Virus record (IMG/VR): IMGVR_UViG_3300028592_000004 | Span: 1 to 64,000 of that record | Reading direction: 5' to 3' (one strand) | Length of the DNA stretch: 64,000 nucleotides | Shown here: positions 953-35,820 of the stretch, piece after piece | Position numbering within the stretch: the stretch's first letter is position 1 | How the letters are laid out: the number at the start of each line of letters is the position of its first letter | Made by a program: the position numbers and the translations under genes | Notes under the pieces: model-generated | What the model saw: the letters and a program-made list of their open reading frames with translations, nothing else | Databases searched by the model: none | What the model was told of the DNA's origin: nothing

Positions 953-1177
953 CTATCTCCGCGGGTAGTGGGGACCGCCGATCACAGGACCCGGGACGCT
1001 GACCTTGACCGGAAAGCCCTCCCAGTCCGCGATCTTCTCGATCTCCGGATTCTTGCGGTCGAGATAGACGAAGAGGGTCGAGACGGCGGCGCCGATCCCA
1101 ACCCTCCCCTCTGATCCGACACGCTCCTGGAGGCGTTCAGCAGCCTCCTGCATCTGCTGTGGGTTGGGCTCGTTCAT
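953..1177 (-). CDS. Hypothetical protein
   Basis: ATGA overlap with upstream gene (MNEPNPQQ...). Confidence 0.55.
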   Translation of the reverse strand: MNEPNPQQMQEAAERLQERVGSEGRVGIGAAVSTLFVYLDRKNPEIEKIADWEGFPVKVSVPGPVIGGPHYPRR

Positions 1178-1665
1178 AGGCCGAGATCTCTCAGCACGAC
1201 AATGCTGGCGTCCACCGCGGCCAGGAATTGCTGGGGATTCGTCGCATCCCACTTGCACTCCGGCAGAGCTCGCGAACCGGGCTTGTACCTCCGCTGCAAA
1301 GACTTCGCCTTCCCGAACGCCTCAAGCGTCAGAAGGCTCGGCATCTGGACCATGTAGCCGAGCAAGCCAGCCAGCGTCCCGAGCCGAATGCAGTCGATGG
1401 CCTGCATGAGGTTTTGCACCTCTTCGGTCAAGAAGTGATAGCCCTCCTGACCCCACGTCACCGGCCGAATTGGCAGCAGCATGGATCCAGCCAGGCAGAC
1501 CATACAGACATCAGGATTGTCTGCATCAAGCCGGATGAAGACGTGCATGTTGATCTCCACATTCGGAGTCGACATCGCAGTGACGAGGTCATTCCGCGCC
1601 ATCTGCAACCAGTCCGCCATCGAGCGTGCCTTCTCGCCGAACTTCTTCTGATGAAAGTCGTGCAT
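1174..1665 (-). CDS. CxxCLAG-family protein, copy A
   Basis: SMADWLQMARNDL, CMVCLAGS, AIDCIRLG motifs shared with five paralogs. Confidence 0.75.
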   Translation of the reverse strand: MHDFHQKKFGEKARSMADWLQMARNDLVTAMSTPNVEINMHVFIRLDADNPDVCMVCLAGSMLLPIRPVTWGQEGYHFLTEEVQNLMQAIDCIRLGTLAGLLGYMVQMPSLLTLEAFGKAKSLQRRYKPGSRALPECKWDATNPQQFLAAVDASIVVLRDLGL

Positions 1666-2530
1666 CGCGCTCTTGCTTTCCCGGGACAGATCGGCGCCCG
1701 TTCCGGTCCCACACCTTGATCATGGCAATCATGCGCTTGGCAGCGCTGGAGCGATTCTCGGCGGTGATGGGACCGTGAGCCGAGATCGTATCGAGGAGAG
1801 CGTCAGCCAGTGCCTTTTCAAGCGTCGGCCGGTCGCTGCCCATGTTGATCGGCAAGTGGGCCTCGGTATCGAGAGCCTCCTTCCGTTGAGCATTGAGCCT
1901 TGCGGTTTCCTGCCTGTGCTTCTCCAGTGCGATCTCATCACCCTGGAGGCCAGCCAGTGTCTCTCGCAGAACGAGAATCTCGATCTGCCGCGAGGCTTCC
2001 AGCGCGGACCGAAGCCGAACCGCATACTCTTCGAGCGTATGCACGCGGTCGTTGAGGTTCCGGACGATCCGATCGCGCTGAATCCGAATGTCCTCGACAG
2101 GCTCGCCAGCCGGACCCGGAAGATCCTGAGGACCGGCTGCGCCCAGATGACCGGATCGGCCGTCGCAGAAGCCGTCCGGCGCGTGGTGCTGATGGACTGG
2201 CCGAAAGCCGGCCGGCCAACCCGGGCACCGCGGATCCATCGCATACTTGCCACAACCTTTGCAGCGAGGTGCGCGGTGAGGCGGATAAGGCAGCAGTGCC
2301 TTAATCCAGTCGTCAGCGAGCTGGTAGTCGCGAGTGTGCTGGTGCGTGACAGGATGCTCGTAGTCGTCCCACGAGTCGTCACCGCCGCGATACGACTGCG
2401 TGATCAGAGCCCGGCGCAACTGGTCCCAGGGAATTTTGTCGTCAGAGATGGGAACTCCTGCGATGAAGAGCGCACCTCTGACAATGATGAACGTCTCTCT
2501 ATCACGAGAGATGATGATTTCGTCGGACAT
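1589..2530 (-). CDS. Hypothetical protein with CxxC and coiled coil
   Basis: Long ORF from MSDEIII; CKGC motif; heptad-rich middle. Confidence 0.6.
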   Translation of the reverse strand: MSDEIIISRDRETFIIVRGALFIAGVPISDDKIPWDQLRRALITQSYRGGDDSWDDYEHPVTHQHTRDYQLADDWIKALLPYPPHRAPRCKGCGKYAMDPRCPGWPAGFRPVHQHHAPDGFCDGRSGHLGAAGPQDLPGPAGEPVEDIRIQRDRIVRNLNDRVHTLEEYAVRLRSALEASRQIEILVLRETLAGLQGDEIALEKHRQETARLNAQRKEALDTEAHLPINMGSDRPTLEKALADALLDTISAHGPITAENRSSAAKRMIAMIKVWDRNGRRSVPGKQERDARLSSEEVRREGTLDGGLVADGAE

Positions 2531-2531
2531 A

Positions 2532-2594
2532 CTACCCTGCAATGAGCCAGCCCAGGCCGAAGCCCAGTACGAGAAGAAAGAGAAGGCAACCCAC
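2532..2594 (-). CDS. Possible 20-aa hydrophobic peptide
   Basis: GTG start, MGCLLFLLVLGFGLGWLIAG, stop 1 nt before next ATG. Confidence 0.3.
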   Translation of the reverse strand: MGCLLFLLVLGFGLGWLIAG

Positions 2595-2624
2595 CGGACC
2601 GTGCCAAAGCGGCCGGTCCGGTGG
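2591..2624. other. Strong hairpin (terminator or translation-occluding stem)
   Basis: CCACCGGACCG / CGGTCCGGTGG perfect 11-bp inverted repeat; pyrimidine run downstream on minus strand. Confidence 0.55.
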
Positions 2625-2633
2625 ATGCTGCGA

Positions 2634-2653
2634 TTCAATCCGCGGGTTTTGAT
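2634..2653. promoter_or_regulatory. 20-bp TTCAAT-N8-ATTGAA site, copy 1
   Basis: TTCAATCCGCGGGTTTTGAT at gene junction. Confidence 0.7.
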
Positions 2654-3042
2654 CAGGCCTTGGCAGGATAGTAGCCCTCGGGCGGTGCGTGGGCCTCCCA
2701 GAAGGAGTCCTTCTCACCGTTCCAGTAGTTGGCCTGCTGGAGCATCTGCAAGGAGTGCTCCTGATCGTCCGACAGGAGCAGGAGCATGCCAATCCGGGCG
2801 ACCGAAGTGGTGATCTTCCGGCGACGCTCCGAATCGCTGGAAGCGAAGTTAGCGCCGTCCATGAAGTCAGACAGCGCCATCTCCAGGTCGTCGAGTGCTC
2901 GATCCTTCGCCCAGAGGATCCCGGCTTCCGGCATGGAAACGGTCTTCATTCGATTTCCTTCAATACAGCTGCCAAAGGCCCCGGTCGCTTCAGTCAGGGC
3001 CTGCTCCAGCTTCGTCTTTGCCTCGTCGATCCGGGTCGCCAT
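2653..3042 (-). CDS. Hypothetical helical protein
   Basis: ORF in the same-strand gene run. Confidence 0.6.
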   Translation of the reverse strand: MATRIDEAKTKLEQALTEATGAFGSCIEGNRMKTVSMPEAGILWAKDRALDDLEMALSDFMDGANFASSDSERRRKITTSVARIGMLLLLSDDQEHSLQMLQQANYWNGEKDSFWEAHAPPEGYYPAKA

Positions 3043-3904
3043 AGCGTCGCTTCTTGAGGAGTCGAACGGCCGCTGCCGGGTTCAGCAGCGTGAAGAAGAT
3101 CAGATGAGTCGGCTCTCCGGTGAGAAAGGTCCCATCCGGGTGCGGATCGTGGACATAGTCGAAGCCCATGAGGCCACGACAGCGTCCGACAACCGCGTGC
3201 CGACCAGTCGTGCATTCCCGCGGCGAGTTCCCGATGATGATCACTGGGGCCTGGCGCGGGACAGGGTAGAGGATCGGACGGTCGTCGAGAATCAACTCGA
3301 TGGCCTGGAGTCCGAAGCCAGCCAGCCACTCCTGAAACACGTCCCAGTCCCAGGAGTCGCCGTCGCAGGCGGTCGGAACGTGCTCGACAGGGACGTCCAG
3401 CACGGTCGCGACACAAGCCCGGAAACAGCTCGTCGGGGTCGGCTGCGTCACCCGGATGGCCACAGGCACCAGTGTACGGGCAGTCAGCTGCTCCGTTAGC
3501 ACACTAATGTCATTGCAGGCCGCGTCCCAGCAAGCCTTCATGGCTCGGGCGTCGGCGTGTGCCATCCGAAGCATTTTGCGGGCTGCTACGAGCGCAGGCG
3601 TCGCGTCAGGCGGCTCCGAGGACGTTTCCGCGGCCCGAATCTCTCGGGAACGCCTCAAAACGTCTCGGAGAGCCTCTCCGTGACCCATAAGCCCGCCAAA
3701 AGCCAGCTTCGCATCGGAACTCATCCATGCGAAAGCTGGCTCAGATTCAACTCTACCGATCTGTCCGAAGATCTGGGCGGCAATGCCGGCCAGCAGATCG
3801 AGGAGGAGGTTTTCGGTCGGGATCTCCGCCGCAGACCGCGCGAACGACTCGCGTGCTTCTGCGACAAGCTCGTCATAGGACTTAGAGGGTCCACTCGTCG
3901 ACAT
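2990..3904 (-). CDS. Protein with C-terminal papain-like (C39-type) cysteine peptidase domain
   Basis: Q-x5-C in VTQPTPTSCFRACVA, HAVV, VHDP: C39-like Cys/His/Asp order. Confidence 0.5.
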   Translation of the reverse strand: MSTSGPSKSYDELVAEARESFARSAAEIPTENLLLDLLAGIAAQIFGQIGRVESEPAFAWMSSDAKLAFGGLMGHGEALRDVLRRSREIRAAETSSEPPDATPALVAARKMLRMAHADARAMKACWDAACNDISVLTEQLTARTLVPVAIRVTQPTPTSCFRACVATVLDVPVEHVPTACDGDSWDWDVFQEWLAGFGLQAIELILDDRPILYPVPRQAPVIIIGNSPRECTTGRHAVVGRCRGLMGFDYVHDPHPDGTFLTGEPTHLIFFTLLNPAAAVRLLKKRRYGDPDRRGKDEAGAGPD

Positions 3905-4155
3905 CAGTTCGTGTCCAATCCGCGGATGCGATCAAACTCTTGCGGTGCGTCCTCAGGAACGGCGTCCGTGAAGGTCACCAGCCCGAGAATGTAGTGGTAG
4001 CCGTGGTAGTACATCGGCTCACAGCGGGTGATCTCGATTTTCTGCGTCTCGGGGCGAGTCAGCGAAACGATGCAGTTCTGAAACTCCACTTCGGCACCCG
4101 CTTTACTGTCCTCAAAGCCGGTGTCGATCTTCTCCAGGCGAAGTTGCGTTTTCAT
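3904..4155 (-). CDS. Hypothetical protein
   Basis: Tight packing with neighbours. Confidence 0.55.
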   Translation of the reverse strand: MKTQLRLEKIDTGFEDSKAGAEVEFQNCIVSLTRPETQKIEITRCEPMYYHGYHYILGLVTFTDAVPEDAPQEFDRIRGLDTN

Positions 4156-4156
4156 C

Positions 4157-4516
4157 TCAGACCGTCGCGAAGAAGTTGAGGGCCTTCCGAAGCAGCTCCA
4201 TCGTCGTCGGCCGGATGGCGACGCGTTCCGGCATACCGGTCTGTAGATGCCACTTCCGGAACTTCGTGTGCCAGGTGCTGATCAGCTTACGAGCGGCTTC
4301 GCTGAATTGCTTCTGCCACTCACAGCGGACACGACCGTACTTGGTCTTGTCCCACATTTCGACGATGACCGCGTACGGGAAGGTCCTCGCGAACTCATCC
4401 CCGCGGATCGTCATGACGAAAGCGACAGCCTTCGAGCTGTTCATGGACGAGTCGAGATCCTCGAACTCGGTGCGGTGTTCGGGCGGCTCGTACCGCCCTT
4501 GAAGGACTCCGCTCAT
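4157..4516 (-). CDS. Hypothetical protein
   Basis: ATGA overlap. Confidence 0.6.
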   Translation of the reverse strand: MSGVLQGRYEPPEHRTEFEDLDSSMNSSKAVAFVMTIRGDEFARTFPYAVIVEMWDKTKYGRVRCEWQKQFSEAARKLISTWHTKFRKWHLQTGMPERVAIRPTTMELLRKALNFFATV

Positions 4517-4758
4517 TCGAGCACCTCATGATCCGATAGAGACTCGCCGCAAGCGGAGCAACGAGTGTCTGAATGAAGGCCCTTAGCGATGTTGCCGTCT
4601 GTGTCGACCAACTCGGCGCCGGCGCCGAGCCGAGACGGCGTCACCCAGGGCATGCTGCCCGTCGCAACAAACTCGACATCCACCGAGTTCGGTAACAGAA
4701 GGTTGGCCCCACATTCAGGGCATTCAGTGACCTTGTAACGGTGACGGAAGTCGCTCAC
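4513..4758 (-). CDS. Zinc-ribbon protein
   Basis: CPECG ... CSACG. Confidence 0.65.
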   Translation of the reverse strand: MSDFRHRYKVTECPECGANLLLPNSVDVEFVATGSMPWVTPSRLGAGAELVDTDGNIAKGLHSDTRCSACGESLSDHEVLE

Positions 4759-5120
4759 TCCACTACCTCGTCACCCTGGAAGGCGTGCGGGAATTCGTGG
4801 AAGCCGAGCACCTTCCGCTCGCCGGCCACTCGCTTCTCCAGCCGCCACTGCGCCAGGTTGGCGACATTGGCACTGCGGTGGGCGATGAGCCCGTACCGGC
4901 GGTCCCGGTCCCACACCTCTTTGACGACCTTAGAGATCAGGTGCGGTGGCTTGTCGTACCGCTTCGGACGAAAGACTCCCAGGATCGGGCCATAGACGAC
5001 TGGCAACCAGCCATCCTTCTCGGCCCAATCCCAGAGATCCTTCAGAGCCATGTCCACTTCAAGCTGATCTTGCTCGTGGAAGGCTCGAAGAAGACGTTCA
5101 AGGCAAAGCAATGGATCCAG
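4755..5120 (-). CDS. Hypothetical protein (LW-x-[HW]A...LPV family), probable CTG start
   Basis: AAGGAGG 6 nt before CTG-GAT-CCA, 1 nt after upstream TGA; LWDWAEKDGWLPVVYGPILG matches two paralogs. Confidence 0.6.
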   Translation of the reverse strand: MDPLLCLERLLRAFHEQDQLEVDMALKDLWDWAEKDGWLPVVYGPILGVFRPKRYDKPPHLISKVVKEVWDRDRRYGLIAHRSANVANLAQWRLEKRVAGERKVLGFHEFPHAFQGDEVVE

Positions 5121-5121
5121 G

Positions 5122-5673
5122 TCACGCCTCCTTTCCGTTGATGCCACGCAGGATCTGGAACTGGTCCCCAATCAGGAACTGCATACCGTCCCGCTTCTCG
5201 TTGAAGATCCGATGTCCGGCACACTGTGGTTCGCGGCAGTACTTCAGCAGCTCCTGTTCGAATGCGGCGGGGATCACGATAAAGTTTGGCCGAGCGCCAA
5301 CGAACTGACCGCGGGAGTGCTGGATTGCCTCGCCGATCGAGTCTCGGGTGTAGATGTTCCGCCACACCTGCAGGTCGATGTGGTCGAGACTGGCCGTCTG
5401 AGCCGACAGCAGATCGAACTTCGCGCCGACCAGAACCTGGAGGCCGTAGATCGACCTTGTGTAGTCCCGATCGGTGGGCAGCGGAACGACGCCTTGCGGA
5501 TTGTCGTTCCAAAGGTACATCGTCTGCCACATGTCGGGCGGGGCGATGAGGTGGGTCACCCGACGCTTCATCGGGCGAAAGAGCCGGTCGAGCTCCTGGA
5601 TCGCCGGGGACAGCTCCTCCGGCGTCTCGGGATACTCACCGTTCAGGAACTTCGGAGCTTCGAAGTGGGTCAT
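5122..5673 (-). CDS. Hypothetical protein, weak capsid A-domain-like segments
   Basis: THLIAPPDMW...IYGLQVLV and RPNFIVIPAAFE. Confidence 0.55.
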   Translation of the reverse strand: MTHFEAPKFLNGEYPETPEELSPAIQELDRLFRPMKRRVTHLIAPPDMWQTMYLWNDNPQGVVPLPTDRDYTRSIYGLQVLVGAKFDLLSAQTASLDHIDLQVWRNIYTRDSIGEAIQHSRGQFVGARPNFIVIPAAFEQELLKYCREPQCAGHRIFNEKRDGMQFLIGDQFQILRGINGKEA

Positions 5674-6082
5674 GAGTTGCCTCGGGATGGGCGTCGACCT
5701 TCAGGTAGAAGAAATCGACGTCGTGGAATTCGAGATAGACCCGGGCCTGCTGGAAATCCTGCCCGAGAGCGAAGGCAAGATGCTGGACGGCGGCGCGGAA
5801 GTTATGCCAGGTGTCACCGAGCTTCCAGATCTCTGGATTACGAACACCAGTGATGACGAAGACAGGCTCGCCGTCCTCGGGACAGCCGCGGGCCATCTCG
5901 TAGAGGGCATTTCCAAGCATGACAACACAGCTGACTGCATTGCCCCACTTGTCGCGAATGTGGAGGTTGTGCCTGTCGATCGCGTGCTGAAGGAGCCGAC
6001 GATCATTCATCGGCACTTCGCCCTGAAGCTGTTTGTAACCCGGCTGGATGCCAAGAGTGATGCGGAAGGCTTCAGTCTTCAT
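5636..6082 (-). CDS. Hypothetical protein
   Basis: ORF with GCPEDGEP...RNP motif. Confidence 0.6.
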   Translation of the reverse strand: MKTEAFRITLGIQPGYKQLQGEVPMNDRRLLQHAIDRHNLHIRDKWGNAVSCVVMLGNALYEMARGCPEDGEPVFVITGVRNPEIWKLGDTWHNFRAAVQHLAFALGQDFQQARVYLEFHDVDFFYLKVDAHPEATHDPLRSSEVPER

Positions 6083-6530
6083 CTTCAGCTCCGAAGTGGA
6101 GAGCGTCCTTCAAGCGGACTTCCGGGTTGTCCGGAGCCGCAGAGCACTCGTCATTCGCCTGGAACGCCGTCAGGTTCGGCGTCCCACAGTAGACGCACTG
6201 CCCCAGGAAGTCCTGACCCTTCGGGCTCGTGCGTTCGAGAACATGCGTTGCCATGAGGTTCCTCAGGAATGTATCGCCGAGGGGAGCATTCACCGCTGCA
6301 AAACCCAAGCGGCGAGCGAGACACGCGCTGAGCTGGACTGTGTCGTAGAACGGCCTTGTCTTCGACAACTCGATGACGTAGACCGGCCCGCGAATAATCC
6401 CATTCGGTATAGGCCCCGCAAACGGAATAGTGAGCCCTGCGTACGGTGCGAAGTACTGAGTGGCCGGCCGAGCTCCCAAGGCAGCGGCAAAGCCACCCAG
6501 GAGTCGGCCGAAGAAGGTTCTGCGTTTCAC
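6072..6530 (-). CDS. Twin-arginine-signal protein with C-terminal CxxC
   Basis: MKRRTFFGRLLGGFAAALGA; CVYC. Confidence 0.65.
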   Translation of the reverse strand: MKRRTFFGRLLGGFAAALGARPATQYFAPYAGLTIPFAGPIPNGIIRGPVYVIELSKTRPFYDTVQLSACLARRLGFAAVNAPLGDTFLRNLMATHVLERTSPKGQDFLGQCVYCGTPNLTAFQANDECSAAPDNPEVRLKDALHFGAEDED

Positions 6531-7039
6531 GAGTCGTCCTCGTCTTCGTCGGGCGCAAATTCGATCTCGACGTCGAGATGGTGTTGGAGCTTAGCCAGAT
6601 CCGCATCCGAAACAAACCGAAGCGCGATCTGAAAGGCTTGCTGCAGATCACCGATCTCGTGATCCGGTTCAGACTCCTCGCCGTGCCGCTGAGCACGGTC
6701 GATCATCTGCTGATAGATTTCGTCGCGAGACACTGTTGGCTCCTGCCCCGGGCTGGGCATTTCATAAATCCGCGTCGGCGGAAGGATCTGAAGCTGGCCG
6801 AGAGCCCCAGGATTCCGAAGAAGCCCAGTGATCTTCTCGCAGTCGGCCGGCGACAGCCGATTCATCGTGAGCACCGATTGCCGCTCCATCGAGCTGTAGT
6901 CGGCGAGCCGGAACGGCATGGCTCCGGACATCGGCGGCATGTCATAGAGCGGAGACGGCGCCGAAGCCGCCACTTTACCGAGACCGAGCATCGAGGCGAC
7001 ACCGCCCACAACCCGGCCGAAGAAAGTTCTACGTTCCAT
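6527..7039 (-). CDS. Twin-arginine-signal protein
   Basis: MERRTFFGRVVGGVASMLGL. Confidence 0.65.
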   Translation of the reverse strand: MERRTFFGRVVGGVASMLGLGKVAASAPSPLYDMPPMSGAMPFRLADYSSMERQSVLTMNRLSPADCEKITGLLRNPGALGQLQILPPTRIYEMPSPGQEPTVSRDEIYQQMIDRAQRHGEESEPDHEIGDLQQAFQIALRFVSDADLAKLQHHLDVEIEFAPDEDEDDS

Positions 7040-7046
7040 GTAGCAC

Positions 7047-7517
7047 CTAGACTCCCTTTGCTTTGAGCAGAGCGAGGACGGCGTCCATTCCAGTCCGCCA
7101 GTCCTCCGGGCTGTCTGTATACCGGGTCACGTGGACGTTTGGAATCTCATTGCGCAACCAGAGCTCCTCGCACCGCGAGCGCGTCGCGGCAGGGATCAGC
7201 AGCGAATGGCGCACATCACACAGAGCGGATTCGATGTCACCACTTCGAAGGTAATCCAGCGCCTGAAGAATTCGTGCGAATTCAGGCGTCATGTGGTGCG
7301 GATAGGTGGTTCGCTCAAGCGGCACTTCGCCGGTCTGAGCCATGACCGCCCCGCCCAAGCAGACCAGACACACACCCTCCGCCGGGTGGTGCCAGCTGCT
7401 CATGTCGATTTCGTAGCGAGGATCCTGCTCGCATTTGCGTAGGTCCTCAAGGGCAAGCTCCAGCCACTCGGACAAAGCCCGGGGCTGGAGCTGATCAACA
7501 GCAGCAAATTCCGACAT
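7047..7517 (-). CDS. CxxCLAG-family protein, copy B
   Basis: LSEWLELALEDL, CLVCLGG, ALDYLRSG. Confidence 0.75.
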   Translation of the reverse strand: MSEFAAVDQLQPRALSEWLELALEDLRKCEQDPRYEIDMSSWHHPAEGVCLVCLGGAVMAQTGEVPLERTTYPHHMTPEFARILQALDYLRSGDIESALCDVRHSLLIPAATRSRCEELWLRNEIPNVHVTRYTDSPEDWRTGMDAVLALLKAKGV

Positions 7518-7525
7518 AGACTCCT

Positions 7526-7768
7526 TCAGCAGGGCTCGCCCCGCGCTGGTGGGACCATTTCAAAGAGCACCTGAACGAGCTGCTGCTCACTCAGGATCTC
7601 CGGATGCTGTCGCGCAGCCGCGATCAATCGCACCACAGCCACCGGGCCGTCCATACCACGAATGCTGTCGGCCAAATCGTAAAGCGACGTCGTGTCTGCG
7701 TTCGGAAAGGAGCGGTAGTTCGAAAACGACTCCTTGGCGTTGAGAATCAGCGTCGAGAGACCGTTCAT
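7526..7768 (-). CDS. Hypothetical protein
   Basis: ATG 2 nt after 20-bp site. Confidence 0.5.
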   Translation of the reverse strand: MNGLSTLILNAKESFSNYRSFPNADTTSLYDLADSIRGMDGPVAVVRLIAAARQHPEILSEQQLVQVLFEMVPPARGEPC

Positions 7769-7770
7769 TG

Positions 7771-7790
7771 TTCAATACCCGCGGATTGAG
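7771..7790. promoter_or_regulatory. 20-bp site, copy 2 (inverted spacer)
   Basis: TTCAATACCCGCGGATTGAG fills most of the intergenic gap. Confidence 0.75.
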
Positions 7791-7791
7791 T

Positions 7792-8127
7792 TCAGAGCAT
7801 CTTCGCGGCCAAGAGCAGCGTCAGCAGGTGGAACGCATTGTCCACCACGATGCTGCTCCAAGGCCCCATGTTGTCACGGAAGCCGGCCTGGCCGGCATGC
7901 CCCATGTACCAGTGGATAAACTGGCTGCGGTCGATCGCAAAGTGCGTCGCGAACAGCCAGAAAAGCGGCAGCAACGACCAGCAGCCACTGCAGGTCGCCA
8001 CCGCCAGGGTCCAGACAAGGCAATGCACCGCACAGGGCAGTGACGCCTTCTTCTTGTTGAGGGCCATCCAGTGGTTCTGGAGCAGATAGTCCCCAACCAT
8101 GTGGCCGACAATCATCTCGGCAAGCAT
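7792..8127 (-). CDS. DUF3307-like membrane protein
   Basis: GHMVGDYLLQNHWMALNK...VHC...VDNAFHL His/Asp pattern in hydrophobic helices. Confidence 0.65.
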   Translation of the reverse strand: MLAEMIVGHMVGDYLLQNHWMALNKKKASLPCAVHCLVWTLAVATCSGCWSLLPLFWLFATHFAIDRSQFIHWYMGHAGQAGFRDNMGPWSSIVVDNAFHLLTLLLAAKML

Positions 8128-8618
8128 TACAACTCCACCTCTTTCAGTTTGTCGGCGACGGCCTGGATGTAGGCAAAGAACTCAGCGTTCGAATCATTGC
8201 GGCTGTAAACCCACTCGACAGCGTCCGGCAGGCTAACAGGCCAACCAGAAAAACCGAGTGGACTCATCTTTTTGCGATCTGCCTCAGGAATGTAGCCGAC
8301 TGCGTCCTGAGCGTAGATGAGCGAGGTCTGGATGTGGCCACCACGGACAGCGTCGATTGCCTGGAGCAGATTTCGCTCAAACTGCGTGAGGCTGTGGAAC
8401 TCGTCCGCGAACCGGCTTGTCGGGTTGTGCCCGGCACCGGCCAGCACAGAGCCAGCCAGGCAGACGCGGCAGACACCCGGACGGGTGTAGTGCTGTTTGA
8501 GAAAGCAGGTCATATCGACCTCAAAGACTGGGTCCAGTTCGACCCGCTTGAGATCAGCAATAGCGAGTTCAAGCCACGCGGAGAACTTCCGCGGGCTCAT
8601 GTCGTGGGCTGGCGTCAT
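8127..8618 (-). CDS. CxxCLAG-family protein, copy C
   Basis: HDMSPRKFSAWLELAIADL, CRVCLAGS, AIDAVRGG. Confidence 0.75.
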   Translation of the reverse strand: MTPAHDMSPRKFSAWLELAIADLKRVELDPVFEVDMTCFLKQHYTRPGVCRVCLAGSVLAGAGHNPTSRFADEFHSLTQFERNLLQAIDAVRGGHIQTSLIYAQDAVGYIPEADRKKMSPLGFSGWPVSLPDAVEWVYSRNDSNAEFFAYIQAVADKLKEVEL

Positions 8619-9184
8619 ATCCCAAGCTCTTTCAGCTTAGCGACCACCCGATCCATGCCGTCGTAGAACGGCTGTTGGTCCGAAGCCGATTTCTTGTGCT
8701 CCCAGTAGCCGATTTCCAAAGAGCAGTCGTCGCCGGCAAAGCGAAGCTCAGCAATTCTCGGCCGCACAGCAGCGTCAATGAACCGGTTTTCGCTACCCAG
8801 CTCATCAAGTGCCGCGTCGATGTTGCCGTTCCGTAGCTGGTTGATCGCTTGCAGCAGCTCTTGGCTATCGGCACTGAGGTAGTTGAAGACATCTCGTTCA
8901 AAGGTCGTGGAGACGCCGGCGCCGGCCAGGACAGAGCCAGCCAGGCACATTTGGCATTGCGGAGTCAAATAATCCTCATGGCGGTGATGCGGATTGACTC
9001 TCGACTGCACGTAGAACACACCCATGTTCACTACGAACCCGGGCGTGACGGCGAACCGTCGAAGGTCCGCAACGGCAAGTTCGAGCCACGCGGAGAGGGA
9101 CCGCGGACTCATGTCGTGTACGATCTGCTCCTCTTTGAATTCGAGAAGAGATCCCAGCAGCGTCTTCGTGTCAGGCTCAGTCAC
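8615..9184 (-). CDS. CxxCLAG-family protein, copy D
   Basis: GTGA overlap start; HDMSPRSLSAWLELA, CQMCLAGS, AINQLRNG. Confidence 0.75.
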   Translation of the reverse strand: MTEPDTKTLLGSLLEFKEEQIVHDMSPRSLSAWLELAVADLRRFAVTPGFVVNMGVFYVQSRVNPHHRHEDYLTPQCQMCLAGSVLAGAGVSTTFERDVFNYLSADSQELLQAINQLRNGNIDAALDELGSENRFIDAAVRPRIAELRFAGDDCSLEIGYWEHKKSASDQQPFYDGMDRVVAKLKELGI

Positions 9185-9714
9185 AGCCCAAGACCTTTCA
9201 GTTCGAGAAGAACAGAGTGGATGTCTTCGAAGAACGGTTCGTTGTCGGGATCGTTCAGCTCCCAACTCGCCATCTCGTCTTCGAAGTTCGGTAGACGAGA
9301 CCCCTCGTCGAGCAGCTCACGGATCCGCTTCCAGTCGCTCTCGACGATGTAGCGGTTCTCGTCCTTGCTAAGCATGAGGTTGTAGAGAGCGCCCGCGATG
9401 CGACCACGTCGCAGCTTATCGATCGCGAACAGGAGGCCAGCGAGGTCCGCGTCGCCGCGGGTGATGTTTTCCATCGTGCCAGCCGGCGTCCAGTGATCCA
9501 ATCCGGCTCCGACGAGAATGGAACCGGCCAAGCACACGTAGCACGTGTCCGTGTGGAGCGTCGCCAGGAAGTAATCCATGTGCGGCGTGTATCTGGGGTC
9601 CTGCATGACCAGCTTCAGGTCCTGCACCGCCAGTTCGAGCCACTCGGAGAGTTTCCGAGGGCTCATGTCGTGCTGTTTAAGTGCGGTTTCCATCGCTACT
9701 TTCTGCGGCGTCAC
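9181..9714 (-). CDS. CxxCLAG-family protein, copy E
   Basis: HDMSPRKLSEWLELA, CYVCLAGS, AIDKLRRG. Confidence 0.75.
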   Translation of the reverse strand: MTPQKVAMETALKQHDMSPRKLSEWLELAVQDLKLVMQDPRYTPHMDYFLATLHTDTCYVCLAGSILVGAGLDHWTPAGTMENITRGDADLAGLLFAIDKLRRGRIAGALYNLMLSKDENRYIVESDWKRIRELLDEGSRLPNFEDEMASWELNDPDNEPFFEDIHSVLLELKGLGL

Positions 9715-10025
9715 AAGATGCCTTTCCGCGCTTTGAGCGCCTTGAGCTCATCCCAAATCAGACCGAGCCGGCCGCGGTACTGCGCTCCGTAGAACGTGAC
9801 CAGGGCATACCCGGGCATCGCTGTCGGCACGCCAAGGATGCCGGGCTCGGTCGTTTCGATGTTGAGGCCGGGCCAGGTCTGAACGACCTCCCGAAGATGA
9901 GGGATGTCCGCGATCTTGACGTTCTGATCGCACACCCACTGTGCGTTCCCGGTCCGCATCTTTGCTTCGTAGGCCAGAAACTTTTCATGCCAGTCATCGA
10001 AGCCCGGCACCTGCAGCTTGAGCAT
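9711..10025 (-). CDS. Hypothetical protein
   Basis: MLKLQVPGFDDW..., tight packing. Confidence 0.55.
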   Translation of the reverse strand: MLKLQVPGFDDWHEKFLAYEAKMRTGNAQWVCDQNVKIADIPHLREVVQTWPGLNIETTEPGILGVPTAMPGYALVTFYGAQYRGRLGLIWDELKALKARKGIL

Positions 10026-10026
10026 G

Positions 10027-10212
10027 TCAGATCCCCGTAATTTCGTCGTCGAACTCGTCAAACGCGTAGAGCAGCTTGATCGCCCAGTACATGGCAAGCA
10101 GCGTCAGTAGCACAACCTGCGAGAGCGGCTTCACGTGAAAGGCAGTCCACATCAGAGCCACGAAGGTGCCGCCCATCATGATGATGTGGACCCACAGCAG
10201 GAAGCGTTTCAT
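10027..10212 (-). CDS. Small two-helix membrane protein
   Basis: Two hydrophobic stretches. Confidence 0.6.
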   Translation of the reverse strand: MKRFLLWVHIIMMGGTFVALMWTAFHVKPLSQVVLLTLLAMYWAIKLLYAFDEFDDEITGI

Positions 10213-10400
10213 CGCAGCCCTTTCCAGCGGTCGCGAGATCGGAGCTTGCGTCGCTCCTTTCGCTGGGTTTTCTTCTTGGCCCTCAGCCTCTGCAGATCCT
10301 CGCCAGTCGGCTTGACGTGGTAGCCGTTGTGGTGGCTACCCCAGGCCGCAACGATCGCCTGCAGGGTGTCGTGAGGCTTAATCTTGATATCCCAGCTCAC
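10209..10400 (-). CDS. Small basic protein
   Basis: AAGGAGGAG before GTG; K/R-rich C-terminus. Confidence 0.5.
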   Translation of the reverse strand: MSWDIKIKPHDTLQAIVAAWGSHHNGYHVKPTGEDLQRLRAKKKTQRKERRKLRSRDRWKGLR

Positions 10401-10674
10401 GAAGCTCCTCCTTGGCCTGCTTGCCAACTCCGATACGGAGGTGGTGCATGAAGACCGGCTGGCCCGGTGCTTCCAGCGGCGAGCGCATCCATGCGCCAGG
10501 CAGAGCCATAGATTTCCCGATCGAGCGACCGATCCGAAGAACAATGGATCGTTCCTCGTAATACGCAGCCGGCAGGTCAGTGTAGGGCGGTGCTGTAAAG
10601 CGATGAGCCTCCAACAGCATATTCTCCAGCGTCGTGACGTGGTCAAACGACGCTGGATTGGTTGCAGGTCTCAA
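10378..10674 (-). CDS. Hypothetical protein
   Basis: AAGGA before TTG. Confidence 0.5.
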   Translation of the reverse strand: MRPATNPASFDHVTTLENMLLEAHRFTAPPYTDLPAAYYEERSIVLRIGRSIGKSMALPGAWMRSPLEAPGQPVFMHHLRIGVGKQAKEELRELGYQD

Positions 10675-10976
10675 GGCGTTCCTTTCTCTGGCTCTTCAAC
10701 CAGCGTCACTTCCCAGAAGTAGTAGAGCGCGTCAACCGCCTCACCATCCTTGCCGGCAGAGCGGACACGAACCATCTCCGGATAGACTTCACGCACATAG
10801 CCAGGCAAACCGGCCTTTGGCTGCACCCGCTTGCCCTTCCACTGGGTTTCGAGGTCCTGCATCCGGGCGTTGTAGGCTTCGTTGGCCTCCCGGGTCTGGA
10901 TCACAAGGTGAGCCAGCCCGTACAAAACGGCACCGCCGAAAACGGCGGTCAGGACGCCACTCCAGAACTTGTTCAT
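10671..10976 (-). CDS. Protein with N-terminal transmembrane helix
   Basis: MNKFWSGVLTAVFGGAVLYGLAHLVI; ATGA overlap. Confidence 0.6.
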   Translation of the reverse strand: MNKFWSGVLTAVFGGAVLYGLAHLVIQTREANEAYNARMQDLETQWKGKRVQPKAGLPGYVREVYPEMVRVRSAGKDGEAVDALYYFWEVTLVEEPEKGTP

Positions 10977-11629
10977 TCCCTTGCCTCTCCCGTGTAGGTC
11001 TTGCCACACGCCCGCGACCAGCCGTCCGGAATGTCCGGCTCAAAGACGGTGCCAAACTTAACCTTTCGGCAGCCACAAGCCCAGATCGTCCCCTTCGGAC
11101 TGATCAGCATGTCCTCGCAACAGCACCAGTCGTCGTTTGACTGGATGCCGTTCTTGAGAGCCGAGCCGTGAGGAGTGATGATCGTGTTCGACCGCACACC
11201 CTCGTGGTTCTTCCGGCGTTGCAGGTCGCGAAACGCGACAACGACAGCCTTGTCGATCGGGTCGTGCCACTCGTCTTGCGAGAGCACAGCCTCCAGCTTT
11301 CCTTCAGCGCACAGTCGAGCCAGCCGGAGAGCCGTCTTCGTCTGTGAGCCGTTGGTGATGATCAGCAGCGGGATACCGCTGTTGGAGAGCATCACTTCCT
11401 CACGGCGGTCCCACTCGTGGTACTCCAGCGCCCGCGTGACGAACGGCCAGAATTCCGGATGAAGCGTCGGTTCACCGCCACCGAGGCAGAAGTGATCACC
11501 GCGGTCGTGCGTGAGGCCCAGCGCCCGCAGAAAGACCTCACGTGACATGTCGACACCGATGCCCGGTCTGCAGCTGAAACAGCAGTGGGCACAGGCCATA
11601 TCGCAGCGTGTCGTGATCTGGATGTAGAT
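10973..11629 (-). CDS. Radical SAM protein, apparent ATC start
   Basis: IYIQITTRCDMACAHCC gives CxxxCxxC; GGEPTLHP; ITNG; C-terminal CCC...ACGC. Confidence 0.8.
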   Translation of the reverse strand: MYIQITTRCDMACAHCCFSCRPGIGVDMSREVFLRALGLTHDRGDHFCLGGGEPTLHPEFWPFVTRALEYHEWDRREEVMLSNSGIPLLIITNGSQTKTALRLARLCAEGKLEAVLSQDEWHDPIDKAVVVAFRDLQRRKNHEGVRSNTIITPHGSALKNGIQSNDDWCCCEDMLISPKGTIWACGCRKVKFGTVFEPDIPDGWSRACGKTYTGEARE

Positions 11630-11631
11630 GA

Positions 11632-11877
11632 CTACCCTCCGGCGTGAGCGAACTCAGGCGCGCTCTCGGCGAAGTCCTCCACAGTGCACAGCTCAACGAG
11701 CGACGTCGGGCTAACCGAGATCAGGTCGCCAGTCGGCGAAGCGCCGTAAACGAGCCGCGGGTTGAGCCCGTGATGCTGCACGGACTTTGCGCTCAGTCGG
11801 AGATGGACCTTGCCACCGCTCCGCTTCCGGAAGTACTGCCCTTCGGCAATGACCTCCGCGTCAACGATCAGTCTCAT
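11632..11877 (-). CDS. Hypothetical protein
   Basis: ATGA overlap. Confidence 0.55.
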   Translation of the reverse strand: MRLIVDAEVIAEGQYFRKRSGGKVHLRLSAKSVQHHGLNPRLVYGASPTGDLISVSPTSLVELCTVEDFAESAPEFAHAGG

Positions 11878-12405: not shown

Positions 12406-12415
12406 ACTGTGCCTT

Positions 12416-12526
12416 TCAAATGCTCCAGTACTGCGGAGGGTCGTCGTTCCGTCCCCAGAAGAGGATGATCAGAACAACGATCCCAACCGCGACATAGAAA
12501 CGCCAGTCGCTCGCAGCATCTTGCAT
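12416..12526 (-). CDS. 36-aa single-TM protein
   Basis: Own translation MQDAASDWRFYVAVGIVVLIILFWGRNDDPPQYWSI; AAGGA upstream. Confidence 0.55.
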   Translation of the reverse strand: MQDAASDWRFYVAVGIVVLIILFWGRNDDPPQYWSI

Positions 12527-30781: not shown

Positions 30782-30801
30782 TTCAATGCGCGGGTATTGA
30801 A
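30782..30801. promoter_or_regulatory. 20-bp site, copy 4
   Basis: TTCAATGCGCGGGTATTGAA spanning upstream stop, 8 nt before next ATG. Confidence 0.8.
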
Positions 30802-33827: not shown

Positions 33828-34105
33828 TCGGCGGGCTCCGCTTTGTCGACTTCGTCGCGGTTCTTGAGCATGGCGTCAAAGAAGACGTTCTGCATCATGA
33901 ACCGAGTTCGACTATGCACCTCGGCAAACCGACTGGCGATATCGGACCGGATCCAGGCAGCCTTTGTCGCCTCGTCCAGGGCCGGTTGCAGCCCGTCGAA
34001 GATGGACATCACGTGCATCGTAGCGGTGAAGTCGACCGGCTCAAGTTGCTCCACTGTTGGAGGGTTGGCCAGCATGTACTCCAGGCTCTGTAGCCCCTTC
34101 TCCAC
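33824..34105 (-). CDS. Hypothetical protein
   Basis: ORF in gene run. Confidence 0.5.
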   Translation of the reverse strand: MEKGLQSLEYMLANPPTVEQLEPVDFTATMHVMSIFDGLQPALDEATKAAWIRSDIASRFAEVHSRTRFMMQNVFFDAMLKNRDEVDKAEPAE

Positions 34106-34580
34106 CAGGGTCAGCAGCTCCGGAACCGTCTCCTGGCTCAGGGTCTTGCCGTTGAACAGAATCGGTCTCAGTCTCCTTCTGGGCCGGAATCCCGGCGGTG
34201 TTGATCATCACGTACGGCATCCCTCCAGGAAGAAGGGGCCAGGTCTCACGCTCAGACATGAACGCGGCGTAGCCGAGGGCCATGCCCAAGCACAGCAGCC
34301 CTTCGGCCTGGATGTGGAACCCCGTCCACATGACTCCATCCTTGCGAGTGACGAGGTTGAGGAAGCTCCATCCTTCCTTGAATTGATCCGGGAGCTGGTC
34401 GAGCATCGCGATCACGTTTTTGCGTTGCTCCTCCAGCCTCTCGGGATGAAACGCGAGCCTGTGAACTGGCCCGATGACAACCTTGGCCCACTCCGGAGCC
34501 GTGACACCGTCGATCAAGTCCTTCCTATCAAGCAGGCACGCCAATGCGACTGCGTCAACGTTCTCCCCTGTGAGCTCCAT
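34041..34580 (-). CDS. Conserved-looking phage hypothetical protein
   Basis: FHPERL...GWSFL...WTG-x-H...LPGGMPY. Confidence 0.6.
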   Translation of the reverse strand: MELTGENVDAVALACLLDRKDLIDGVTAPEWAKVVIGPVHRLAFHPERLEEQRKNVIAMLDQLPDQFKEGWSFLNLVTRKDGVMWTGFHIQAEGLLCLGMALGYAAFMSERETWPLLPGGMPYVMINTAGIPAQKETETDSVQRQDPEPGDGSGAADPGGEGATEPGVHAGQPSNSGAT

Positions 34581-34581
34581 G

Positions 34582-34926
34582 TCACCTGTCCTTTGCTTGG
34601 TTGTAGGCCGCGGCAAACTCCGCCAAGGAGTACGGCGTGGCCCGCTTTCCTTCCTCGATTGCGTCGGCGATCTGCTTTCTAACCGTCTTGCGGTCAGTCG
34701 CTTCCAGATCCTTGACGACCTGGTCCAGATCGTTACCGACAATGCCTCCACTCTCATGCTCGACAATCAGTGTTCGGTCAACGCCCGGCAGATTGACGAC
34801 ATGAAGCTGGACTCCGTGCTTGTACTTCTTCGGGCGTCCGAGACTGACCTCGATCGAAATCGGGGTATGCGGACTGCCGAACAGGAACGGCCGATATGCG
34901 GCGGTGTAGATCTTACGTTTGGCCAC
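34582..34926 (-). CDS. Hypothetical protein
   Basis: AAGGA before GTG. Confidence 0.55.
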   Translation of the reverse strand: MAKRKIYTAAYRPFLFGSPHTPISIEVSLGRPKKYKHGVQLHVVNLPGVDRTLIVEHESGGIVGNDLDQVVKDLEATDRKTVRKQIADAIEEGKRATPYSLAEFAAAYNQAKDR

Positions 34927-35299
34927 GGCGCTTTCCTTTCTTGCGAGCTTTCACGCGCTCCTGGATGTGGGCTTCGATGAACTCTTCACGGCTCGCGTAG
35001 ACGGGCGCGTTCATGTCCATCGCTTCGTAGTCCCACCCAGTTCGAGCGAAGATACGGGCCATCTGGCCCAGGTTCTCCTCCTTGAGCTGGAGGATCAGAT
35101 GACCAGCACAATGCTGCGCGGTCGGCGGCGGGGCAAAGACTTTCGGCACGTCGCCTTCATCGTTGTCCACGGTCTTGTGACACGGGAACACCCCATCCAT
35201 GTGAGCCACGATCTCCCGCGCTCGGCCCAGTGTCAGGAAGACGGGAATGTCGCTCCTGAACGGGCACTGCGAGCACGGACTCTTCAGATCGGTGCGCAT
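34913..35299 (-). CDS. Cys/His metal-binding phage protein
   Basis: PCSQCPFR...FPCHKT...HCAG. Confidence 0.65.
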   Translation of the reverse strand: MRTDLKSPCSQCPFRSDIPVFLTLGRAREIVAHMDGVFPCHKTVDNDEGDVPKVFAPPPTAQHCAGHLILQLKEENLGQMARIFARTGWDYEAMDMNAPVYASREEFIEAHIQERVKARKKGKRRGQT

Positions 35300-35820
35300 C
35301 AGAGACCCACGATCTTCAAGATCTCGATCGTCCGGTTGATCTGCGTGTAGAAAGTCGTATCACCCTTCGCCCACTGCCACTGACGTGCAGGATAAACAGG
35401 CAGCGGTCGGGGTTGACCGAGGATCTCCGCCAAAGACAAACCTTCGCCAAATCTCCTGACGACTGTCCTCACCCGATTACGAGTTTCGCGATCGAGTAGC
35501 TCCGGAATGTTGTCTGCGCAGGCGATCGCGTGTCGCAAATCACCGCCGCGAAGCGAGTCGACCATATCGAGAAGCCATCTCTCAGAAGGCAGCGTCGAAG
35601 ACCAGGCGTTGAAGTCGATAGGTAGTGACGCGGGATCACATCGCCTGTAGAGCATTGCTCCCGCCAAGCAGACATGGCACTTTCCATCGCTGCCGCTTGA
35701 GAGGAAGGTTCGCATGTTGACAACGACATCGGGCAGATCCTCGATCCGCTGCAAGTCGTCCCGAGCTGCTTCAAGCCAGCCCGACATTGATCTCTGCTCG
35801 TTCGCAAACTTCGGTTTCAT
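35299..35820 (-). CDS. CxxCLAG-family protein, copy F
   Basis: SMSGWLEAARDDL, CHVCLAGA, MVDSLRGG. Confidence 0.75.
   Translation of the reverse strand: MKPKFANEQRSMSGWLEAARDDLQRIEDLPDVVVNMRTFLSSGSDGKCHVCLAGAMLYRRCDPASLPIDFNAWSSTLPSERWLLDMVDSLRGGDLRHAIACADNIPELLDRETRNRVRTVVRRFGEGLSLAEILGQPRPLPVYPARQWQWAKGDTTFYTQINRTIEILKIVGL

What the first reader, a model, noticed from the sequence alone, without database searches (positions are those of the whole stretch)
1174..35820. Six-copy unknown protein family with a CxxCLAG core, four copies clustered at 7.0-9.7 kb
Seen: copies at 1174, 7047, 8127, 8615, 9181 and 35299. All share S-x-x-WL[EQ]-x-A-x-x-DL, a conserved Met, C-x-x-C-L-[AG]-G and [AM][IVL][DN]-x-[LIV]R-x-G, and five end in L[KR]-x-x-G[LIV]. 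Three adjacent copies keep DNA-level similarity, e.g. CACGACATGAG[CT]CC[GT]CGG and the 27-nt CLAGSVLAG block at about 8440 and 8922, while the segments between motifs differ strongly. Copy F lies directly behind a 20-bp site and another site sits inside the cluster. Inference: a conserved scaffold with variable loops expanded by duplication, as seen for anti-defence or host-specificity gene accordions. The lone CxxC could be a redox centre or half of an intersubunit Zn site.
Basis: partly seen in the sequence, partly recalled or inferred. Interest (0 to 1): 0.7.

Follow-up and report, generated by a model that had tools for sequence, protein, structure and literature searches.

The report
Six-copy unnamed phage CxxC protein family
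A 229-kb soil jumbo phage carries six old, diverged copies of a small cysteine-pair protein from a very large, virus-only family that no database names; what the protein does is still unknown.

Summary
Six minus-strand genes (A 1174-1665, B 7047-7517, C 8127-8618, D 8615-9184, E 9181-9714, F 35299-35820) are true paralogues. All 15 pairs match by BLASTP, and there are exactly six in the 229-kb genome.

They belong to a huge unnamed family: 5019 clusters at 50% identity, almost all from viruses or metagenomes. There is no match in Pfam, PHROGs, NCBIfam or PADLOC. The confident AlphaFold model (pLDDT 88) matches nothing in PDB or Swiss-Prot. The nearest named family is DUF6197, itself uncharacterised, and the link is borderline.

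C-x-x-C-[LFIVM]-[AGSC]-G is present in 248 of 255 members.

One copy per phage is usual: 19 of 22 records have one and 3 have two. RNA-polymerase relatives of this phage have none. One 6.6-kb contig has nine.

The six copies are old (28-40% BLASTP identity). A single origin is not rejected (p-AU 0.89). At least five are conserved in the nearest strain. They evolve under purifying selection (omega 0.18-0.50; loops 0.41, core 0.25).

So "conserved scaffold, variable loops, expanded by duplication" is supported. A recent arms-race "accordion" is not. Anti-defence and redox/Zn roles remain untested.

The parts
1174..1665 (-). Copy A, 163 aa, CMVCLAG at residues 54-60. The most divergent copy.
   Evidence: ORF; alignment; HMM hit 4.3e-27. 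The start of its orthologue lies at the end of the relative's contig.
7047..7517 (-). Copy B, 156 aa, CLVCLGG. Closest to the family consensus.
   Evidence: E 1e-45. Orthologue in L002 is 75% identical, omega 0.50.
8127..8618 (-). Copy C, 163 aa, CRVCLAG (C50, C53). This is the protein that was modelled.
   Evidence: AlphaFold2 pLDDT 87.7. Orthologue 86.5% identical, omega 0.18.
8615..9184 (-). Copy D, 189 aa from GTG 9184. Its start overlaps E's stop as GTGA, and its own stop overlaps C's ATG as ATGA. Has a loop insertion before CQMCLAG.
   Evidence: Orthologue only 56% identical, dS 1.1, omega 0.30. The stretch 8705-9012 is more than 20% diverged in another soil run.
9181..9714 (-). Copy E, 177 aa from GTG 9714 or 170 aa from ATG 9693. 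CYVCLAG.
   Evidence: Orthologue 77% identical, omega 0.34.
35299..35820 (-). Copy F, 173 aa from ATG 35820. CHVCLAG. It lies alone, 26 kb from the cluster.
8431..8471 (-). Codons for C-x-V-C-L-A-G-S-V-L-A-G-A-G of copy C. The same block lies at 8916-8956 in D (85% nt identity), 9503-9543 in E and 7330-7370 in B.
   Evidence: Repeat family D2.
8589..8606 (-). The 18-nt word CACGACATGAGYCCKCGG (H-D-M-S-P-R), shared by C, D (9101-9118) and E (9655-9672).
   Evidence: 3 matches against 0 expected.
7792..8127 (-). DUF3307 membrane-protein gene directly downstream of C. Not a member of the family, but part of the same gene string.
   Evidence: Pfam PF11750, E 4e-9. 99% aa identity to the relative, omega 0.015.
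7526..7768 (-). An 80-aa ORF between the DUF3307 gene and copy B. No family found.
   Evidence: 90% identical orthologue.
7772..7789 (.). Near-palindromic intergenic site TCAATACCCGCGGATTGA. It splits the cluster into E-D-C-DUF3307 and g80-B.
35831..35849 (-). The same site, 11 nt upstream of copy F's ATG.

Best explanation
What is shown:
- The six ORFs are real, expressed-looking genes of a soil jumbo myophage. They are paralogues within a very large, virus-restricted, unnamed family of soluble proteins of about 130-190 aa.
- The predicted fold runs: a long N-terminal helix (S-x-W-L-E-L-A-x-x-D-L), a small three-stranded sheet carrying an invariant Met, an almost invariant C-x-V-C-L-A-G-A at the junction of strand 3 and helix 2, a helix ending in L-D-x-L-R-x-G, and a C-terminal helix ending in L-K-x-x-G-L.
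- Between these elements lie loops that differ strongly from copy to copy.
- The six copies are consistent with old duplications inside this phage lineage. They have since been kept by purifying selection.

What is inferred:
- The Cys pair, possibly together with the invariant Asp or Met, forms a metal or thiol-based site that every member needs.
- The variable loops around it give each paralogue a different partner.
- The proteins act alone, as non-structural early or accessory factors, in host takeover or counter-defence.
- One copy is enough for most phages. This jumbo phage has sub-functionalised six.
For: Genes and family:
- Paralogy and count.
- Family size: 5019 clusters at E<=1e-3 and 1559 at E<=1e-10.
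- ESM Atlas neighbours are 71-100% viral.
- Only one hit in 185,579 prokaryote species genomes for the core motif.

Conserved site and fold:
- The Cys pair is present in 248 of 255 members. Invariant residues are D, M, C, C, G, R, G.
- In the tandem fusion P0108, one domain has lost the second Cys while the other keeps it.
- Confident model, pLDDT 87.7, pTM 0.86. C50 ends strand 3 and C53 sits just before helix 2, residues 54-61.

Selection and history:
- Loops evolve faster than the core, omega 0.41 against 0.25.
- Single origin not rejected, p-AU 0.886.
- Accessory status: 0 copies in 8 RNA-polymerase relatives, two of them at least 96% complete (control). 1-2 copies in 22 other phage records. 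9 copies in one 6.6-kb contig.

Context:
- Neighbours elsewhere are early and replication genes, with no constant partner.
- The E-D-C gene overlaps indicate co-expression.
Against: - No experiment and no characterised homologue exists, so the function is an inference from pattern only.
- Apart from the Cys pair, all the invariant residues could be purely structural: a helix cap, glycines, an Asp-Arg salt bridge.
- The residues after the CxxC are hydrophobic (LAGAVMA), which suggests a buried helix rather than an exposed active site.
- Gene-wide omega is below 1 and shows no sign of an arms race.
- A family this broad and this conserved could equally be a general enzyme of phage DNA or nucleotide metabolism.
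- The homodimer prediction gave no usable answer.
Confidence: 0.35

Rival explanations
1. A conserved enzyme or redox cofactor protein of phage nucleotide or DNA metabolism. The CxxC at the start of a helix would act as a thiol-disulfide or catalytic centre. The paralogues would serve different substrates or client enzymes rather than host targets.
For: - Near-universal Cys pair at a strand-to-helix junction.
- Invariant Asp and Arg.
- Neighbours in other phages include SNF2 helicase, PD-(D/E)XK nucleases, MazG, dCMP deaminase and AAA_24.
- DUF6197 genes in actinophages lie beside DNA polymerase I or DnaB.
- A radical-SAM gene lies near the cluster.
- Purifying selection throughout.
Against: - The fold is not thioredoxin-like, and no oxidoreductase or enzyme fold matched.
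- The residue context C-x-V-C-L-A-G is unlike known redox CxxC motifs.
- Related jumbo phages, two of them essentially complete, have none.
- There is no conserved partner gene.
Confidence: 0.25
2. A purely structural small adaptor or regulator, for example one that binds the phage replisome or RNA polymerase. Here the Cys pair only stabilises the fold, perhaps through a bridging metal in a dimer, and the paralogues are partly redundant.
For: - Tandem two-domain fusions occur in this family (P0008, P0009, P0036, P0108) and in DUF6197 phage genes (PMC10586128). They hint at dimeric function.
- E, D and C are joined by overlapping stop/start codons.
- The genes sit in early or replication modules.
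Against: - The homodimer prediction did not reach the mark, which counts neither for nor against.
- Redundant copies would not be expected to stay intact under purifying selection at 28-40% identity.
Confidence: 0.2
3. A recent gene-accordion amplification driven by an ongoing arms race.
For: - Four copies are clustered within 2.7 kb, and short DNA-level similarities persist between C, D and E.
- The family genes are among the more diverged genes between two otherwise partly identical strains.
Against: - The copies share only 28-40% identity.
- At least five of the six are already present in the nearest strain.
- Omega is 0.18-0.50.
- The divergence between strains comes with dS of 0.3-1.1. 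That points to exchange of old alleles by recombination, not to fast change in place.
Confidence: 0.03

Closest known systems
Pfam DUF6197 (PF19698), for example Gordonia phage Nebulosus gp47 and gp72. Function unknown.
   Same: - Small phage proteins with an N-terminal helix, an aromatic hairpin and a Cys-Cys-x-x-G-A helix.
- They occur in early and replication modules, sometimes in two copies or as tandem-domain fusions (PMC10586128).
- One tandem member of the present family (P0008) scores 23.4 bits against PF19698, where the cut-off is 24.6.
- 83 of the 100 nearest named ESM Atlas clusters have DUF6197 in 15-20% of their members.
- P0116 appears by eye to fuse a DUF6197-like domain to a domain of this family, although Pfam did not match it.
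   Different: - None of the six copies or the 70 aligned members matches PF19698 at E<0.1.
- Profile-profile comparison aligns only 22 columns, probability 6.5%.
- The Cys spacing is C-x-x-C here and C-x-C there.
- The C-terminal halves differ: L-D-x-L-R-x-G and L-K-x-x-G-L here, F-N-D...V-L-x-L-F-D-x-A-I there.
- Structural TM-score is only 0.41-0.45.
Uncharacterised viral proteins R9ZYW5 (Cellulophaga phage phi17:2) and A0A0F9THC6 (AlphaFold DB cluster representative)
   Same: Same predicted fold: TM 0.60/0.57 with E 1.2e-3, and TM 0.62/0.72 with E 6.4e-4.
   Different: Only 19-20% sequence identity, and they are themselves unannotated, so they add no function. R9ZYW5 does offer a cultivable phage for experiments.
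Thioredoxin and glutaredoxin-type CxxC oxidoreductases, including phage NrdC and NrdH
   Same: A CxxC placed at the end of a strand and the start of a helix. Phages often carry such proteins.
   Different: No thioredoxin fold and no sequence or structure match. The motif context C-x-V-C-L-A-G-A is hydrophobic.
Poxvirus-type gene accordions, and paralogue families of jumbo phages
   Same: Tandemly clustered paralogues of a small accessory gene in a large viral genome.
   Different: Accordions are recent, near-identical and polymorphic in copy number. These copies are old, diverged and fixed in the nearest strain.

Membership tests
Pfam DUF6197 (PF19698) | Scores above the Pfam gathering cut-off (24.6 bits) against the family HMM | tested here: not met
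   No hit at E<=1 for the six copies, none at E<=0.1 for 70 family members, and none in the genome's six frames at E<=10. Only the tandem relative P0008 comes near, at 23.4 bits and E 7.7e-5.
Pfam DUF6197 (PF19698) | Profile-to-profile homology over most of the domain | tested here: inconclusive
   hhalign of A2 (70 sequences) against A4 (9 DUF6197 phage proteins) gave probability 6.5% and E 0.0057, with 22 columns around W...C-C-x-x-G-A-V. The DUF6197 alignment was shallow.
Pfam DUF6197 (PF19698) | N-terminal helix, G-W-x-[KQ]-G hairpin and C-x-C-A-L-G-A motif | tested here: inconclusive
   An analogous helix, an M-x-x-[WF] hairpin and C-x-V-C-L-A-G-A are present, but the Cys spacing and the hairpin motif differ.
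Pfam DUF6197 (PF19698) | C-terminal F-N-D...T...V-L-x-L-F-D-x-A-I motif | tested here: not met
   Absent. This family has L-D-x-L-R-x-G and a terminal L-[KR]-x-x-G-[LIV] instead (against 79).
Thioredoxin-fold CxxC oxidoreductases | Thioredoxin fold carrying the CxxC | tested here: not met
   No Pfam match and no structural match in PDB or Swiss-Prot models.
Thioredoxin-fold CxxC oxidoreductases | Redox-active dithiol | not testable with these tools
   Needs biochemistry.
Four-cysteine zinc knuckle or ribbon | Two CxxC pairs in one chain | tested here: not met
   Only one conserved pair. The other cysteines vary in number and position: copy E has just the two, and family members have 2-8.
Intersubunit Zn site (half-site per chain) | A homodimer bringing two CxxC pairs together | tested here: inconclusive
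   The homodimer prediction scored 0.00 and the verdict was "no answer". Tandem-domain fusions exist, but that evidence is only indirect.
Recent gene accordion | Near-identical tandem copies and copy-number differences between close strains | tested here: not met
   28-40% identity between copies. The same four cluster copies, plus the start of A, are present in the nearest strain.
Known anti-phage defence components (PADLOC) | Match to a defence-system protein model | tested here: not met
   No hit at E<=0.1.
Known anti-defence proteins | Homology to a characterised inhibitor or sponge | not testable with these tools
   No anti-defence library was available. PHROGs, PDB and BFVD gave only unnamed matches.

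The most novel reading that the evidence does not exclude
The family is a new, virus-specific class of small metal- or thiol-centred proteins. One conserved Cys2 site is combined with exchangeable loops, so that each paralogue neutralises or rewires a different host protein, for instance different defence systems. Phages would then expand the family (six copies here, nine elsewhere) when they face many targets.
Probability: 0.15. Interest if true: 0.75.

Novelty: new variant of a known kind. Interest (0 to 1): 0.45.

Why it matters
- The family is one of the larger pieces of viral "dark matter". It has thousands of 50%-identity clusters, yet no Pfam, PHROG or NCBIfam model, no solved structure and no paper.
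- It has a confident predicted fold and a nearly universal Cys pair, which makes it a well-defined target for structure and biochemistry.
- This phage and the nine-copy contig provide natural sets of diverged paralogues for asking what the variable loops recognise.
- If the Cys site proves to be catalytic or metal-binding, it would give a function to this family and probably to DUF6197, which is common in actinophages.
- If it proves ordinary, the result still gives annotators a family definition: the motifs, and a length of about 130-190 aa.

Tried and rejected
- Pfam, PHROGs, NCBIfam and PADLOC scans of the six copies or of 70 members: nothing significant.
- PDB by sequence profile: best E 0.06 (YqeY), not significant. 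The DUF6197 profile also found nothing in PDB.
- Fold searches, none significant:
  - PDB by Foldseek, best E 0.76.
  - PDB by VIA-align wide, best Z 4.1.
  - Swiss-Prot models, best E 1.1.
  - Weak zincin, ImmA/IrrE and NlpC/P60-like rows at TM 0.15-0.38. I considered these and rejected them: no conserved His, and low scores.
- tblastn of copy C and of a consensus-like member against 50,697 deposited phage genomes: no match. blastn of the cluster: no match.
- A single DUF6197 protein against the family profile: probability 3%.
- Search for more DUF6197 relatives of gp72: one hit only.
- Homodimer prediction for copy C: verdict "no answer", so it counts neither for nor against binding.
- Search for a conserved neighbour by all-against-all BLAST and by Pfam across 20 viral loci: no constant partner.
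- Test for positive selection: pairwise omega is below 1 in every copy and in both the core and loop partitions. Only one close relative exists, so site models could not be run.
- Relatives of a virus record cannot be drawn automatically. The first genome contigs attempt failed because no stretch of the alignment was conserved enough.
- Literature: one paper mentions DUF6197. None mentions DUF3837, DUF8296 or PF19698.


Full report
**1. The observation**

Six ORFs lie on the minus strand:

| Copy | Coordinates |
|---|---|
| A | 1174-1665 |
| B | 7047-7517 |
| C | 8127-8618 |
| D | 8615-9265 |
| E | 9181-9714 |
| F | 35299-35835 |

- They align end to end. Invariant positions are W, L, A, D and L in the first helix, one Met, C-x-x-C-L-x-G, and R-x-G.
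- All 15 pairs are significant by BLASTP, with E from 4e-30 to 2.5e-8 and 28-40% identity.
- A six-frame HMM search of the whole genome finds these six and nothing else. The next hit has E 0.6 (confirmed).
- The 18-nt word CACGACATGAGYCCKCGG occurs three times against 0 expected.
- The CLAGSVLAG coding block is 85% identical between C and D.

Start-codon analysis refines the gene models:
- D most likely begins at GTG 9184, overlapping E's stop as GTGA.
- C's ATG overlaps D's stop as ATGA.
- F begins at ATG 35820, behind a GGAGAG ribosome-binding site.

So E, D and C are joined by overlapping stop/start codons.

**2. The genome**

- The window is the first 64 kb of a single 229,210-bp contig.
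- It is an IMG/VR virus record that CheckV rates 100% complete, and it comes from soil metagenomes.
- GC content is 61%.
- The genome encodes a multisubunit RNA polymerase beta-like protein, a DNA polymerase, a helicase and a tail sheath. It is therefore a jumbo myophage.
- Nearly all genes in the window are on the minus strand.
- Around the copies lie small genes without any family, a DUF3307 membrane protein, a small radical-SAM protein and a weak DUF6283 match.
- About 2 kb from copy F lie a nicotinamide phosphoribosyltransferase and a PRPP-synthetase-like gene.

**3. Size and distribution of the family**

- A profile of the six copies finds 5019 cluster representatives (50% identity level) at E<=1e-3 and 1559 at E<=1e-10, among 1.84 billion proteins.
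They come from metagenome and assembly sources.
- None of the six copies, and none of 70 aligned members, matches Pfam, PHROGs or NCBIfam. The six copies have no PADLOC match.
- tblastn of two members against 50,697 deposited phage genomes finds nothing.
- A scan of one genome for each of 185,579 prokaryote species, using the commonest core peptide VCLAGAVMA, finds a single 62-kb MAG contig.
- ESM Atlas neighbours are 71-100% viral.

The family is therefore real, very large and essentially confined to uncultivated phages.

**4. Fold**

- With a 70-sequence alignment, AlphaFold2 gives pLDDT 87.7 and pTM 0.86 for copy C.
- The elements are helix 12-28, strands 32-34, 40-42 and 50-52, then helices 54-61, 79-92, 96-104, 112-123 and 144-160.
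- C50 ends the third strand and C53 sits just before the second helix, which begins at residue 54.
- Confidence drops in segments 61-80 and 121-150. These contain the segments that vary most between copies.
- No solved or reviewed structure resembles it:
  - PDB by Foldseek, best E 0.76.
  - PDB by exhaustive VIA-align, best Z 4.1.
  - Swiss-Prot models, best E 1.1.
- The only convincing structural matches are other unnamed proteins:
  - an AlphaFold DB cluster representative, TM 0.62/0.72;
  - a Cellulophaga phage phi17:2 protein, TM 0.60;
  - viral ESM Atlas clusters.

**5. Relation to DUF6197**

Evidence for a link:
- The ESM Atlas feature search puts the copies next to clusters in which 15-20% of members carry Pfam DUF6197. 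This holds for 83 of the 100 nearest named clusters.
- A two-domain relative, P0008, scores 23.4 bits against PF19698, just under the 24.6-bit cut-off.
- DUF6197 proteins taken from Gordonia, Mycobacterium and Rhizobium phages show the same opening theme: helix, aromatic hairpin, C-x-C-A-L-G-A.
- P0116 has an N-terminal part that, by eye, looks DUF6197-like (...YCCLGVAC...ALND...), followed by a domain of this family. Pfam did not match it.

Evidence against full membership:
- Profile-profile comparison aligns only 22 columns, probability 6.5%.
- The Cys spacing differs, and the C-terminal halves share no motif.

I treat the family as a sister or peripheral branch of a DUF6197-like superfamily, not as a member.

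DUF6197 has no known function. The one paper that mentions it notes only its position near DNA polymerase I, a second copy, and tandem-domain variants in cluster A15 Gordonia phages (PMC10586128).

**6. Copy number and history**

- Among 22 other viral records that carry the family, 19 have one copy and 3 have two. Eleven of these records are at least 90% complete.
- Eight jumbo-phage records related to this one by RNA polymerase (53-55% identity) have none, two of which are 96% and 100% complete. The same search finds six copies in the window's own genome, which serves as the positive control.
- One 6.6-kb metagenome contig holds nine copies, eight of them head to tail, and they fall into two clades of L001 copies (three and six) on the tree.
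- In the tree, each of B, C, D and E pairs with an orthologue from the nearest relative, contig L002 (support 98-100).
- The best tree with all six copies and those orthologues held as one clade is not rejected. It is 63 log-likelihood units better than the quick free search (p-AU 0.886).
- The relative's contig ends in the first 24 codons of an A orthologue.

The expansion is therefore lineage-specific but old.

**7. Selection**

The window and L002 are a mosaic. Blocks of 100% nucleotide identity (for example 12.4-18.6 kb) lie beside blocks with dS of 0.3-0.5.

| Copy | Amino-acid identity to L002 orthologue | Omega |
|---|---|---|
| B | 75% | 0.50 |
| C | 86.5% | 0.18 |
| D | 56% | 0.30 |
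| E | 77% | 0.34 |

- D has dS 1.1. It is also diverged beyond 20% over 8705-9012 in a second soil run.
- Neighbouring genes range from omega 0.015 (DUF3307) to 0.34.
- Pooled over the four pairs, structured elements have omega 0.25 and loops 0.41.

This is purifying selection with relaxed loops, plus exchange of old alleles by recombination. It is not detectable positive selection, although one pairwise comparison has little power.

**8. Context elsewhere**

Genes within about 2-4 kb of single-copy members in 20 viral loci are typical early and replication genes: HTH regulators, SNF2 helicases, PD-(D/E)XK and DUF3799 nucleases, AAA_24, DUF669, MazG, dCMP deaminase and a PolB-type exonuclease. 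No gene recurs regularly. The protein therefore appears to work without a dedicated partner gene.

**9. How it most likely works**

Shown:
- A soluble protein, mostly acidic (pI 4.7-7.7 among the six copies; family median 5.3).
- A fixed core and variable loops.
- C-x-x-C-[LFIVM]-[AGSC]-G in 248 of 255 members.
- Invariant D, M, C, C, G, R, G.
- One tandem fusion in which only one of the two domains keeps the full Cys pair.

Inferred:
- A cysteine pair kept this strictly in a cytoplasmic protein usually binds a metal or does thiol chemistry.
- The loops flanking it would set partner specificity.
- Patchy presence among related phages marks it as accessory.

I therefore favour a Cys2-centred accessory protein used in host takeover or counter-defence, sub-functionalised into six paralogues here (confidence about 0.35).

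Rivals, in order of weight:
- A conserved redox or enzymatic role in DNA or nucleotide metabolism (0.25).
- A structural adaptor or regulator, possibly dimeric (0.2).
- A recent accordion, which the data largely exclude (0.03).

**10. Novelty and limits**

- The family is undescribed, but it is of a familiar kind: a small phage accessory protein family with lineage-specific paralogue expansion, probably allied to an existing domain of unknown function.
- I could not obtain model coordinates, a verdict on dimerisation, a deep DUF6197 profile, expression data or any host.
- Nothing here tests function directly.

Noticed in passing
window 7772-7789, 35831-35849, 2634-2652, 30782-30800, 51459-51477 and about 15 more across the genome: A near-palindromic motif, TCAA[AT][AT]CCCGCGGATTGA(A), occurs about 20 times in the 229-kb genome. 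It is almost always intergenic and often lies 0-15 nt before a start codon (for example ...GGATTGAAATG). It could be an operator for a dimeric regulator, a promoter element of the phage's own RNA polymerase, or an RNA hairpin.
   Followed up: partly
window 37483-38565 and 38282-39685 (minus strand): A nicotinamide phosphoribosyltransferase (NAMPT_N + NAPRTase, E 1e-28) lies beside a PRPP-synthetase-like gene (Pribosyltran_N, E 3e-9). This looks like a phage NAD-salvage pair of the kind linked to countering NAD-depleting defences. It sits about 2 kb from copy F.
   Followed up: no
window 1600-18660 against L002: The nearest relative, a 25.7-kb soil contig, is a sharp mosaic. 12.4-18.6 kb is 98.7% identical at the DNA level, and several genes there and at 5.6-6.1 kb are 100% identical. 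Adjacent blocks are only 82-90% identical, and about 9.7-10.9 kb is replaced outright. This is evidence of frequent recombination between co-occurring strains.
   Followed up: partly
window 7792-8127 (minus strand): The DUF3307 membrane-protein gene embedded in the cluster is 99% identical in protein to the relative, despite dS 0.26 (omega 0.015). It is by far the most constrained gene of the region.
   Followed up: no
window 10973-11599 (minus strand): A short (208 aa) radical-SAM protein with an N-terminal CxxCCxxC-like cluster, conserved in the relative (88.5% identity). Its role is unknown.
   Followed up: no
window 43117-49179 (minus strand): A run of glycosyltransferase genes: a TOD1/MUCI70-like domain in a 738-aa protein, then a GT1 and a GT2. 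This suggests phage-encoded glycan or DNA/protein glycosylation.
   Followed up: no
genome ends (G000:C1:23-148 and the last 126 bases): The last 126 bases of the contig repeat bases 23-148 of its start. This points to a circular or terminally redundant assembly, although IMG/VR lists the record as linear.
   Followed up: partly
L001 (6.6-kb metagenome contig), 733-6131: Nine family members in 6.6 kb, eight of them head to tail. This is an independent and larger expansion than the one in the window.
   Followed up: partly
L029 (JAHFDG010000019.1, 62-kb contig binned as Candidatus Methanoperedens): The only hit for the core motif among 185,579 species genomes lies on a MAG contig assigned to an archaeon. 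It may be a viral or other extrachromosomal contig that was binned with it.
   Followed up: no
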